Shown: positions 7,801 to 10,800 of the stretch, piece after piece | How positions within the stretch are numbered: position 1 is the first letter of the stretch | Layout of the letters: each line of letters begins with the position of its first letter | NCBI RefSeq assembly: GCF_032444005.1 | Contig: NC_091291.1 | Coordinates: 141,670,001 to 141,734,000, forward strand | DNA length: 64,000 bases | DNA from: Ranitomeya imitator | Taxonomy: Eukaryota | Reading direction: 5' to 3' | The notes under the pieces: generated by a model | Seen by the model: the letters and a program-made list of their open reading frames with translations, nothing else | Told to the model about the DNA's origin: nothing | Database searches by the model: none | Program-made: the position numbers and the translations under genes

Positions 7801-10800
7801 AAGAGGATTCTGCAGAGTTTTCTCCATCTCCAGATTCTACATTAAGTAAACTTTCAGCAGACTTGTTATATTTTGCAGCACTTTAGTTGCCTGCATATCA
7901 CAGGGGTCCGGGTCCTGAGACCCCTATTGGTCGCTCAAAAGACCGAATAATTGCACAGCCCTGAAGATTTGGCACTGTAGCCTGCGCTTTCCTACCGTAC
8001 CTGAGCTCTGCTCTGTTCGCACTCTGCAACAGTCGGGGGTCCCAGGATCAGCCGTGTAGCCTCACCTCGGGGGTGTTGTGCCGCAGCCCCTCCATTACTA
8101 TACAGCTACCCCACTACCAGTCGGGGGTCCCAGGATCAGCCGTGTAGCCTCACCTCGGGGGTGTTGTGCCACAGCCCCTCCATTAATATACGTATATACA
8201 GCTACCCCAACCACCAGTCGGGGGTCCCAGGATCAGCCGTGTAGCCTCACCTCGGGGGTGTTGTGCCGCAGCCCCTCCATTAATATACGTATATACAGCT
8301 ACCCCACCACCAGTCCGGGGTCCCAGGATCAGCCGTGTAGCCTCACCTCGGGGGTGTTGTGCCGCAGCCCCTCCATTACTATACAGCTACCCCACTACCA
8401 GTCGGGGGTCCCAGGATCAGCCGTGTAGCCTCACCTCGGGGGTGTTGTGCCGCAGCCCCTCCATTACTATACAGCTACCCCACTACCAGTCGGGGGTCCC
8501 AGGATCAGCCGTGTAGCCTCACCTCGGGGGTGTTGTGCCGCAGCCCCTCCATTAATATACGTATATACAGCTACCCCAACCACCAGTCGGGGGTCCCAGG
8601 ATCAGCCGTGTAGCCTCACCTCGGGGGTGTTGTGCCGCAGCCCCTCCATTAATATACGTATATACAGCTACCCCACCACCAGTCCGGGGTCCCAGGATCA
8701 GCAGTGTAGCCTCACCTTGGGGGTGTTGTTTCGCAGCCCCTCCATTAATATACGTATATACAGCTACCCCACCACCAGTCCGTGGTCCCAGGATCAGCTG
8801 TGTTGCCTCACCTCGGGGGTGTTGTGCCGCAGCCCCTCCATTACTATACAGCTATCCCACCACCAGTCGGGGGTCCCAGGATCAGCCATGTTGCCTCACC
8901 TCGGGGGTGTTGTGCCACAGCCCCTCCATTAATATACGTATATACAGCTACCCCAGAACCACAGTCAGGGGTCCCAGGATCAGCCGTGTTGCCTCACCTC
9001 GGGGGTGTTGTGCCACAGCCCCTCCATTACTATACAGCTACCCCACCACCAGTCGGGGGTCCCAGGATCAGCCGTGTTGCCTCACCTCGGGGGTGTTGTG
9101 CCGCAGCCAGTAATAAGCCTCTCTGAAATCATCGAAGATGATGCGGCTTCCGTCTCCGCCACGGGCAGAAAGCACAATGGAGGGGGAGGAATAGGCCTCG
9201 CTGGTGACCCAGGTGGAGTGGAATGTGTAAGTGACTAGAAAGAAAGCCATCACCATAATCATCCCGCTGGCGACCTGGTGGTCCAAAATCAGATCGTTAG
9301 ATGGTTTCACAAGACAAGAGATCCATTGGTGCTGCTAATATTACAATCTCACCTCATTTTTAATGGGGTAGGTGGAATCCTGCTGCTTCTTTGTCTTTTT
9401 ATCAGGACGGCTTATATCAAGGTTCTTCATGTATGTGGCTAATACCTGAGATACCCCGATACCAGACAGGATGCACATGACGGGAGCCAGGACCAGCATC
9501 AGACGCACCTTTAAGAAAAAAGAGGCAAAATGAAATTAGCGATGGGACTGTATAAGCCTACAATGGAGTCCTGCCTACGACAGGTCACAAATTAGGGCTA
9601 TGTTCTCAGATGCAGAGGATCACAATAAAATGCATGCGTGATACACATGGACCTTGCTGCAGATTTCACCATTGCAGGGGGCGAAAGCCACGGCATAAAG
9701 GTGCAGCTTTTCTGCAAGTTACCATTTTGCAGACCACATTCTGTCTGGATGGTGCATAAACTGCAGATCAACAGAAGGTGTGAACACGGCCTAATCTTGT
9801 GCGATAGGTCCTGGAGGACTACGTACCATGACAGCGGAGAAGTACATGCTGGTGACTCCGTACATGATGATGAATATTCTGGCATCAGACAGGTTGCTGA
9901 AGCAATAATAGAGACCAACTGGAGGACGACACAAAGGGCGGCAGTGAGAACATGCACAATACAAAATACTGCACTGCATCACCGAATGTCTCCTAGGACT
10001 AGTAAAGGGGATTCCAGGCCAACAGTATCAGATCAGTGAGGGTCCAATACCCAGAAATCCTGGAACATCAGCCACTACACGGTGTTCAGAGGGGAGATGC
10101 AGCATGGAGAATAGCCATTACATGGCGCATGGAGGCACATTGTTCTGGCTTCATACATAGTCTACACCCAGCCTCAGCGGGAGATGAAAACATCCCATCA
10201 GTGGAGGTACCAGATGTCAAACCTATGTCATTTTGGATAATCCCTTTAAGGTGTTGTTACCTGGAAAATACCTTCTCATATGCTCTTTATGGGTATACTG
10301 GTGTCATAGTGAGAAGTGCTACCACACTGAAGAACAGCCGTGCACTGCACAGTAAGCCAAGTAATGCAGCAGCCGTTGTCCACACCCTAACCCAGCTGCA
10401 GTGTACATGCTGAACCAGAGCCTGCACATTGCCTGGGCTCGAGGGCTGGGGCGTTGCTGTGTATAACGACCAGTCCATTCTTATACGGTTCACTGTTATA
10501 GCATGCGACATAGGAAACGCTAATTCGATATACAATGAAGCATCACCGGACCTGGGAACATGAAGACAAGGAGCTGCAGATCAAAGTAGTAGGAGGACCA
10601 GGTAGTCGGCTGATGTTCAGAAACGGACGCAATGATGGGAATGTTGTTCTTGGCATAAGAAGGATCCAGGAGGGAATAGAAGCGGCCGGTCCATGGGGAG
10701 ATTTTACCTGGGGAAAAAGGAAGAGTCAGTGTCTGGACAGACAATGGAGGAGATTCATCAATCCTGCCCTAAAGTTTGGCTGAGACGAGACGGAAGCCGC

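What the first reader, a model, noticed from the sequence alone, without database searches (positions are those of the whole stretch)
8031..9108. A VNTR has photocopied the STT3A exon-13 end and its splice donor 11 extra times
Seen: the unit includes the last ~23 nt of exon 13 (GGCTGCGGCACAACACCCCCGAG) plus GTGAGG, so intron 13 holds 11 near-identical decoy donors (8997 down to 8065). The nearest decoy would make a 277-nt exon. Reading past the true donor gives GTG AGG CAA CAC GGC TGA, a stop just before the catalytic WWDYG exon. Established: exons under ~300 nt are within normal exon-definition range, and premature stops far upstream of later junctions trigger NMD. Inference: donor choice must rely on proximity or context, and copy number could act as a heritable dial on functional STT3A mRNA and co-translational N-glycosylation.
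Basis: partly seen in the sequence, partly recalled or inferred. Interest (0 to 1): 0.75.

Follow-up and report, generated by a model that had tools for sequence, protein, structure and literature searches.

The report
Splice-donor minisatellite in frog STT3A intron
A 1.1-kb tandem repeat in an intron of a frog's essential glycosylation gene STT3A starts inside the exon and so carries 11 extra copies of the exon's splice signal, but assembled RNA from three studies shows only the normal splice, as in similar repeats already known from human genes such as F7, IFI6 and ABCA7.

Summary
On the minus strand, an 88-98-nt minisatellite (window 8030-9108) begins 23 nt inside an STT3A exon (9274..9086). 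It repeats the exon end plus its GTGAGG donor 11 more times. Ten of the 11 copies match the true site over 21 nt.

Any use of a decoy donor would carry the stop VRQHG* just before the WWDYG exon.

In three RNA runs from three studies, the assembled contigs join 9086 to 7551, the true donor. Contigs can miss rare or NMD-cleared forms, so low-level use is not excluded.

A DNA run confirms several distinct units and a multi-copy k-mer depth, so the array is not an assembly artefact. The exact copy number remains unverified.

The kind is already described: minisatellites whose first monomer spans an exon-intron boundary occur in F7, IFI6, CBS, LMNB2, PDGFA and ABCA7. In those genes only the most upstream donor, or the first two or three, is used. 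ABCA7 already shows the "length dial" idea.

41% of this window is tandem repeat. The scan also noted other donor-copying repeats elsewhere in this genome (EMC1, FTSJ1, NCAPD3).

Verdict: a real feature, a new member of a known kind, of modest interest.

The parts
9086..9274 (-). Its last 23 nt (9108..9086) form the first part of repeat unit 1.
   Evidence: Matches STT3A residues 456-518 at E 7.5e-38. RNA contigs in X3, X7 and X13 cover 9085-9272 and join it to both neighbouring exons.
9080..9085 (-). Authentic 5' splice site GTGAGG, in the context GAG|GTGAGG. This is the most upstream of 12 near-identical donors.
   Evidence: The joint 9086|7551 is present in contigs of three RNA runs. Sequence shown.
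8030..9108 (-). Minisatellite of 11 full units plus a 58-nt partial unit. Units are short (88 nt) or long (96-98 nt, with an extra TACGTATAT). A 369-nt block of four units is duplicated (u5=u9, u6 about u10, u7 about u11).
   Evidence: Tandem Repeats Finder; unit alignment and identity matrix. DNA-run contigs confirm variant units, and k-mer depth fits multiple copies.
8060..9012 (-). Eleven decoy donors. Their exon-end equivalents lie at 8998, 8900, 8812, 8716, 8620, 8523, 8435, 8347, 8251, 8154 and 8066. Ten match the true site over 21 nt; the one at 8716 reads AAG|GTGAGG.
   Evidence: No decoy joint appears in RNA contigs.
9068..9070 (-). In-frame TGA, 16-18 nt past the true donor. It would end any decoy-spliced or intron-retaining reading frame as ...NTPE-VRQHG*.
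   Evidence: Translation of the open frame 9334-9071; sequence.
7552..8029 (-). Unique 3' part of the intron, running from the end of the array to the acceptor.
   Evidence: Sequence. Covered at about 1% of exon depth in RNA runs X3 and X7, consistent with pre-mRNA. No other copy in the window.
7435..7551 (-). Next STT3A exon, 117 nt, encoding [39 protein letters not shown] (catalytic WWDYG motif).
   Evidence: 39/39 identical to STT3A residues 519-557. Joints 9086|7551 and 7435|7189 seen.
9353..9509 (-). Upstream STT3A exon, separated from the repeat-bearing exon by a 78-nt intron (9352..9275).
   Evidence: Joint 9353|9274 in three RNA runs, with the contig ending at 9509. Translation.

Best explanation
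This is a lineage-specific minisatellite that arose by tandem duplication of an ~88-nt segment. The segment began 23 nt inside an STT3A exon and ran about 65 nt into the following intron. It then grew by unequal exchange, including a recent duplication of a 4-unit block.

Because the first unit is the real exon end, the mRNA is unchanged as long as the most upstream donor is used. That is what the RNA shows: the authentic donor at 9086 is spliced to 7551. The 11 downstream copies are removed as part of a 1534-nt intron.

The likely mechanism (inferred) combines exon definition with upstream-first donor choice. The true site is the first donor after the exon's 3' splice site, 189 nt away, and is the only one preceded by real exon sequence. 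Each decoy is preceded by G-rich intron sequence and would make an exon of 277 to 1209 nt.

Any rare decoy use would hit a stop 18 nt past the true donor and be removed by NMD (inferred). The array is most likely a tolerated, near-neutral by-product of a genome very rich in minisatellites, not a regulator.
For: - Array anatomy and identical donors.
- Authentic junction: 9086|7551 is assembled in three RNA runs from three studies, at depth about 400-570, in contigs that run through the whole unique exon. One 1960-nt contig joins four exons. Intron depth is about 1% of exon depth.
- DNA support: a DNA run has contigs for distinct variant units. Its k-mer depth per assembly copy is 4.8-13.9, against 3.8-8.3 in the flanks.
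- Presence in other samples: intron contigs in two RNA studies reach 1.3 units into the array and carry one variant, at 8123.
- Repeat load: 41% of the window is tandem repeat, and several other STT3A introns hold arrays that do not touch splice sites.
- Ancestral donor: another vertebrate's STT3A contig has the same donor GAG|GTGAGGCA and a 108-nt intron with no array, so the donor is older than the array.
- Precedent: for F7 IVS7 only the most upstream of identical donors is used, pseudo-sites are functional only once upstream ones are mutated, and removing repeats does not change the pattern. LMNB2 (100-bp units) and PDGFA (81-bp units) use only the authentic donor (PMC1557585).
Against: - The RNA evidence comes from assembled contigs, which drop rare variants. 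Products cleared by NMD would be under-represented anyway, so a few percent of decoy use cannot be excluded.
- No RNA contig was laid on the first units of the array (8218-9084), so read-through there could not be judged.
- Classic in vitro work (recalled, not checked here) finds that, of two strong donors close together, the one nearer the 3' splice site can win. That would predict the opposite outcome.
- Copy number in the assembly was not verified by a spanning read.
- Neutrality is inferred, not shown.
Confidence: 0.75

Rival explanations
1. Regulated unproductive splicing. A meaningful share of transcripts uses decoy donors, mostly the first at 8998, giving a 277-nt exon. These transcripts meet the TGA and are destroyed by NMD, so array length tunes STT3A output heritably.
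For: - The decoys match the true donor over 21 nt.
- Their predicted accessibility is not lower than that of the true site.
- The stop is in frame.
- Precedents exist in humans: ABCA7 VNTR length affects splicing, and one-unit retention gives a premature stop (PMC5954066). A CBS VNTR has been associated with reduced activity (title cited in PMC1557585).
Against: - No decoy junction appears in contigs of three RNA runs, while the authentic junction is assembled at high depth.
- In F7, LMNB2 and PDGFA the pseudo-sites are silent, and deleting F7 repeats did not change splicing (PMC1557585).
- STT3A is an essential, highly conserved gene, so a costly array would be expected to be purged (inference).
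Confidence: 0.12
2. The array is an active helper. Eleven extra U1-binding sites just inside the intron would raise use of the upstream authentic donor, or protect a repeat-laden pre-mRNA from premature cleavage and polyadenylation.
For: - The sites are strong: positions -2 to +5 can pair with the U1 5' end (read from the sequence).
- From general knowledge, U1 bound in introns suppresses premature polyadenylation, and intronic elements between competing donors can favour the upstream one (the latter is cited in PMC1557585).
Against: - Nothing tested here points to it.
- The F7 deletion series found no autonomous intronic element in the repeats (PMC1557585).
- Another vertebrate splices the same donor with a 108-nt intron and no array.
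Confidence: 0.06
3. Assembly artefact. The array, or most of its copies, was created or inflated by mis-assembly of a repeat.
For: - Short-read contigs collapse the interior (no laid pieces for 8392-8739 in the DNA run).
- No spanning read was seen.
- The best DNA run may come from the same sample as the assembly.
Against: - Contigs of the DNA run reproduce unit-specific variants (8742-8829, 8926-9071).
- The shared core has k-mer depth 31.7 for an assembly multiplicity of 6.6. That is about 4.8 per copy, against 3.8-8.3 in the flanks.
- RNA runs of two other studies carry the array's 3' edge, including the junction between the last two units.
- The ordered higher-order structure is typical of real arrays.
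Confidence: 0.05

Closest known systems
Human F7 intron 7 37-bp VNTR (Borensztajn et al. 2006, PMC1557585)
   Same: The first monomer spans the exon-intron boundary, so the authentic donor is followed by identical pseudo-donors. Physiologically only the most upstream one is used.
   Different: The F7 unit is 37 bp with 5-9 copies, copies only 4 nt of exon, and has a weak donor (TGG|GTGGGT). The frog unit is 88-98 nt with 12 copies, copies 23 nt of exon, and has a strong donor (GAG|GTGAGG). F7 has been tested by mutagenesis; here there is only contig-level RNA evidence.
Human LMNB2 (100-bp unit, 10-15 copies) and PDGFA intron 4 (81-bp unit, 16-18 copies) junction-reiterating repeats, as summarised in PMC1557585
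   Same: Unit length and copy number are similar to the frog array. The repeat reiterates the exon/intron junction, and only the authentic donor is used.
   Different: Different genes and lineage. The primary papers were not read here, only their summary and titles.
Human IFI6 (6-16) and CBS intron 13 minisatellites (cited in PMC1557585)
   Same: A minisatellite at an exon/intron border supplies many copies of the donor.
   Different: In those genes the first two pseudo-sites are used constitutively alongside the authentic donor. From recall, not checked here, the units are short and the IFI6 products are in frame. In the frog no decoy use is seen, and every decoy product would carry a stop.
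Human ABCA7 intron 18 25-bp VNTR (De Roeck et al. 2018, PMC5954066)
   Same: The VNTR includes the exon's splice donor. Use of the next unit's donor retains one unit and gives a premature stop.
   Different: The ABCA7 effect was measured in people. No such measurement exists for the frog array, whose units are 3-4 times longer.

Membership tests
Donor-reiterating minisatellite (F7 IVS7 / LMNB2 / PDGFA / IFI6 / CBS / ABCA7 type) | Head-to-tail tandem array of minisatellite-sized units inside an intron | tested here: met
   Period 88 (88-98), 10.8-11.7 copies, 91% matches. Unit alignment.
Donor-reiterating minisatellite (F7 IVS7 / LMNB2 / PDGFA / IFI6 / CBS / ABCA7 type) | The first monomer spans the exon-intron boundary, so the authentic donor belongs to unit 1 | tested here: met
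   Homology starts at 9108, 23 nt before the exon end at 9086. The exon end is fixed by RNA joints and by protein alignment.
Donor-reiterating minisatellite (F7 IVS7 / LMNB2 / PDGFA / IFI6 / CBS / ABCA7 type) | Downstream units carry donor sequences identical to the authentic one | tested here: met
   Ten of 11 are identical over 21 nt. One has 2 changes but keeps AAG|GTGAGG.
Donor-reiterating minisatellite (F7 IVS7 / LMNB2 / PDGFA / IFI6 / CBS / ABCA7 type) | In vivo only the most upstream donor (or the first two or three) is used | tested here: inconclusive
   Contigs of three RNA runs hold only 9086|7551. Contigs cannot show absence of rare or NMD-cleared forms.
Donor-reiterating minisatellite (F7 IVS7 / LMNB2 / PDGFA / IFI6 / CBS / ABCA7 type) | Copy number varies between individuals (a VNTR in the strict sense) | tested here: inconclusive
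   The only variation seen is one base variant at 8123 in two other studies, plus uneven k-mer depth per copy (4.8-13.9) in the DNA run. No spanning reads.
NMD-coupled regulated unproductive splicing (alternative 5' splice site with premature stop) | The alternative junction is observed in RNA | tested here: not met
   No decoy joint in three RNA runs, at contig level only.
NMD-coupled regulated unproductive splicing (alternative 5' splice site with premature stop) | The premature stop lies more than about 50 nt upstream of a later exon junction | tested here: met
   The TGA at 9070..9068 is at least 70 nt upstream of any decoy junction, and several exons follow.
NMD-coupled regulated unproductive splicing (alternative 5' splice site with premature stop) | The alternative site is conserved across species, or its use responds to NMD inhibition | not testable with these tools
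   No frog genome collection was available and no reads call was left. One other vertebrate contig lacks the array.

The most novel reading that the evidence does not exclude
The frog array is a working rheostat. Decoy donors, mainly the first, capture a copy-number-dependent share of STT3A transcripts that NMD hides from steady-state RNA. Donor-seeded minisatellites, which the scan noted in several essential genes of this genome, would then be a genome-wide source of heritable expression variation in this frog lineage.
Probability: 0.08. Interest if true: 0.6.

Novelty: new member of a known kind. Interest (0 to 1): 0.3.

Why it matters
It gives a natural 12-donor competition series in an essential, highly conserved gene. 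The donors are strong and identical, spaced 88-98 nt apart. The result, at contig level, is that the first donor wins. This extends the upstream-first rule established for human F7 to an amphibian and to stronger sites.

If the scan's other unchecked notes hold, this genome may hold a whole set of such natural experiments. For genome annotation, gene models here must take the first of the identical donors. For biology, the finding is otherwise ordinary: a tolerated by-product of a genome in which about 40% of this window is tandem repeat.

Tried and rejected
1. RNA structure masking the decoys. Local-folding unpaired probabilities for the 9-mer and 7-mer donor cores were no higher for the true site than for the decoys, at two window sizes; if anything they were lower. 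Rejected as an explanation.

2. The unit as a dispersed repeat or transposon fragment. No other copy of the unit or of the intron's 3' flank occurs in the window.

3. Repeat homology reaching further into the exon. Local alignment of the 42 nt upstream of 9108 against the rest of the unit scored below the shuffle mean.

4. Cross-species check. A word search with the 88-aa open frame around the exon gave 390 exon-sized fragments, none with this frog's flanks. The best hit's contig, L001, comes from another, unidentified vertebrate with a 108-nt intron and no array. This shows only that the donor is older than the array. No frog relative could be examined.

5. Other arrays in STT3A introns (13042-13262 and 6579-6715) were read to see whether they also copy splice sites. 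They do not.

6. The IFI6 primary paper (PMC306954) is not held.

7. Splice-site scores (MaxEnt or consensus value) were not computed because no scoring tables were available. Only U1 complementarity was read from the sequence.

8. A joined spliced protein model was not built or searched.

Full report
**What is there**

The gene lies on the minus strand. The exon at 9274..9086 (189 nt, 63 codons) matches STT3A residues 456-518 at E about 1e-37. The next exon, 7551..7435, is 39/39 identical to STT3A residues 519-557 and holds the WWDYG motif. Ten STT3A exons can be read in the first 14 kb of the window.

Tandem Repeats Finder reports an array at 8030-9108 with period 88 (10.8 copies, 91% matches) and a higher-order period of 369. 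The 21-mer made of the exon end plus the donor occurs 12 times on the minus strand, 11 of them exact, with none expected by chance.

The exon-end equivalents lie at 9086 (true), 8998, 8900, 8812, 8716, 8620, 8523, 8435, 8347, 8251, 8154 and 8066.

**Anatomy of the array**

- There are 11 full units and a 58-nt partial one.
- Units come in a short form (88 nt) and a long form (96-98 nt, with an extra TACGTATAT).
- Units 5-8 and 9-11 form a recently duplicated 369-nt block (u5=u9 at 100%, u6 and u10 at 99%). This is the mark of growth by unequal exchange.
- Homology with the exon begins abruptly at 9108. Upstream exon sequence is unrelated to the rest of the unit, and the unit occurs nowhere else in the window.
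- The array ends in mid-unit, at GACTG followed by unique sequence. A simple duplication of one segment does not explain this. I leave it unexplained.

**Is the array real?**

- In a DNA run (X1), contigs reproduce unit-specific variants at 8742-8829, 8926-8997, 8985-9045 and 9016-9071.
- The shared core (8030-8088) has k-mer depth 31.7.
- Dividing depth by the multiplicity of the same 31-mers in the assembly gives 4.8-13.9 per copy, against 3.8-8.3 in the single-copy flanks. The reads therefore hold many copies, roughly as assembled.
- That run may come from the assembly's own sample. However, RNA runs of two other studies carry intron contigs that enter the array from its 3' side for 1.3 units, with one variant at 8123.
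- The interior is collapsed in short-read contigs, so the exact copy number is not verified.

**Are the decoys used?**

Only one reads call was allowed, and all runs were held as contigs. Three runs from three studies (X3, X7, X13) are clearly RNA: exon depth is about 400-900 against intron depth of about 2-5.

All three carry the same three joints: 9353|9274, 9086|7551 and 7435|7189, each with GT..AG ends. The contigs run through the whole unique exon upstream of the junction, so the donor used is the authentic one. In X13 a single 1960-nt contig joins four exons.

The depth shown for RNA runs in the bin 9001-9087 is fully accounted for by the last 3 nt of the exon contig, so no RNA contig was laid on the first units.

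Limits of this evidence:
- Contigs drop rare variants.
- Only seven 31-mers would tell a decoy junction from the true one.
- NMD would thin out decoy products.

The authentic junction is therefore the dominant one. Use below a few percent is not excluded.

**How the choice is likely made (inference)**

Predicted accessibility does not favour the true donor, so structural masking of the decoys is rejected.

The only systematic difference is what lies upstream. The true site is the first donor after the exon's acceptor and follows real exon sequence with no G runs. Every decoy follows GGTGGTGGGG and GGAGGGG, and would define an exon of 277-1209 nt. This fits exon definition plus an upstream-first rule.

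That rule was shown experimentally for the same arrangement in human F7 (PMC1557585):
- The pseudo-sites are functional.
- They are used only when every site upstream of them is mutated.
- Strengthened pseudo-sites (consensus value up to 91) do not compete.
- Removing repeats, or mutating their G triplets, does not change the pattern.

The last point also means that the G-run idea should be held lightly.

**Comparison with what is known**

PMC1557585 states that several genes hold minisatellites whose first monomer spans an exon-intron boundary. It lists:
- IFI6 (25 pseudo-sites, the first two used);
- CBS intron 13 (two used);
- LMNB2 (100-bp unit, 10-15 copies, only the authentic donor used);
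- PDGFA (81-bp unit, 16-18 copies, only the authentic donor used).

The last two are closest to the frog array in unit size and in behaviour.

The ABCA7 intron-18 VNTR includes the exon-18 donor. Use of the next unit's donor gives a frameshift and a premature stop, and VNTR length affects splicing and disease risk (PMC5954066). The frog array meets the structural features of this family. Its in vivo behaviour fits the family but is shown only at contig level.

**Context**

41% of the window is tandem repeat. Other STT3A introns hold arrays that stop short of the splice sites.

A contig from another, unidentified vertebrate has the same donor GAG|GTGAGGCA with a 108-nt intron and no array. The donor is therefore ancestral and the array derived.

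Unchecked notes of this scan list further donor-copying repeats in the same frog genome: EMC1, FTSJ1, NCAPD3 and two others. The EMC1 follow-up reached the same classification but could not test usage. Here usage was tested at contig level.

**Verdict**

The decoys are silent or nearly so, and the dial is unsupported here and not new as a concept. This is a new member of a known kind, with interest about 0.3. A joined spliced model was not built; exons were searched one by one by reference.

Noticed in passing
window 40248-50190: A 9.9-kb satellite of 58-nt units (about 170 copies, 96-98% matches) with very strong strand asymmetry (GC skew about +0.49, AT skew about -0.33).
   Followed up: no
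window 14775-26029: Three large arrays lie in this stretch. The first two lie upstream of the STT3A exon seen near 13.7 kb and so may sit in its introns; no exons were mapped beyond that point. They are an 83-nt unit x19 (14775-16311), about 6.5 kb of a 48-nt unit with 81/96/114/144-nt higher orders (16311-22908), and a 50-nt unit x47 (23708-26029). They create long spurious open frames of up to 568 aa.
   Followed up: no
window 1-3600, minus strand: Long open frames (434 and 270 aa), one containing the reverse-transcriptase-like motif YLDDILI. This is a retroelement copy downstream of STT3A.
   Followed up: no
window 56486-56665: A degenerate telomere-like repeat (TTAGGG-type units), i.e. an interstitial telomeric stretch.
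   Followed up: no
window 13042-13262: An 89-nt unit x2.5 with 100% identical copies. It ends about 60 nt upstream of an STT3A acceptor (near 12980) and does not include the splice site.
   Followed up: partly
window 9275-9352: The intron just upstream of the repeat-bearing exon is only 78 nt. RNA joints confirm it.
   Followed up: yes
window 8010 and 8123: Base variants between data sets. G>A at 8010 occurs in a half-depth contig of the DNA run, which suggests a heterozygous site. G>A at 8123, inside the array, occurs in RNA runs of two studies. The per-copy k-mer depth of the array is uneven (4.8-13.9), which may mean the two alleles differ in unit content.
   Followed up: partly
window 8030-8035: The array ends in mid-unit (after ...CCCCCGACTG) rather than at a unit boundary. 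A single duplication of one segment does not explain this.
   Followed up: partly
L001 1-1219: A Logan contig (SRR21411845, organism not given) carrying four STT3A exons with introns of about 100-330 nt. It has the same donor GAG|GTGAGGCA at the homologous exon end and no repeat.
   Followed up: partly
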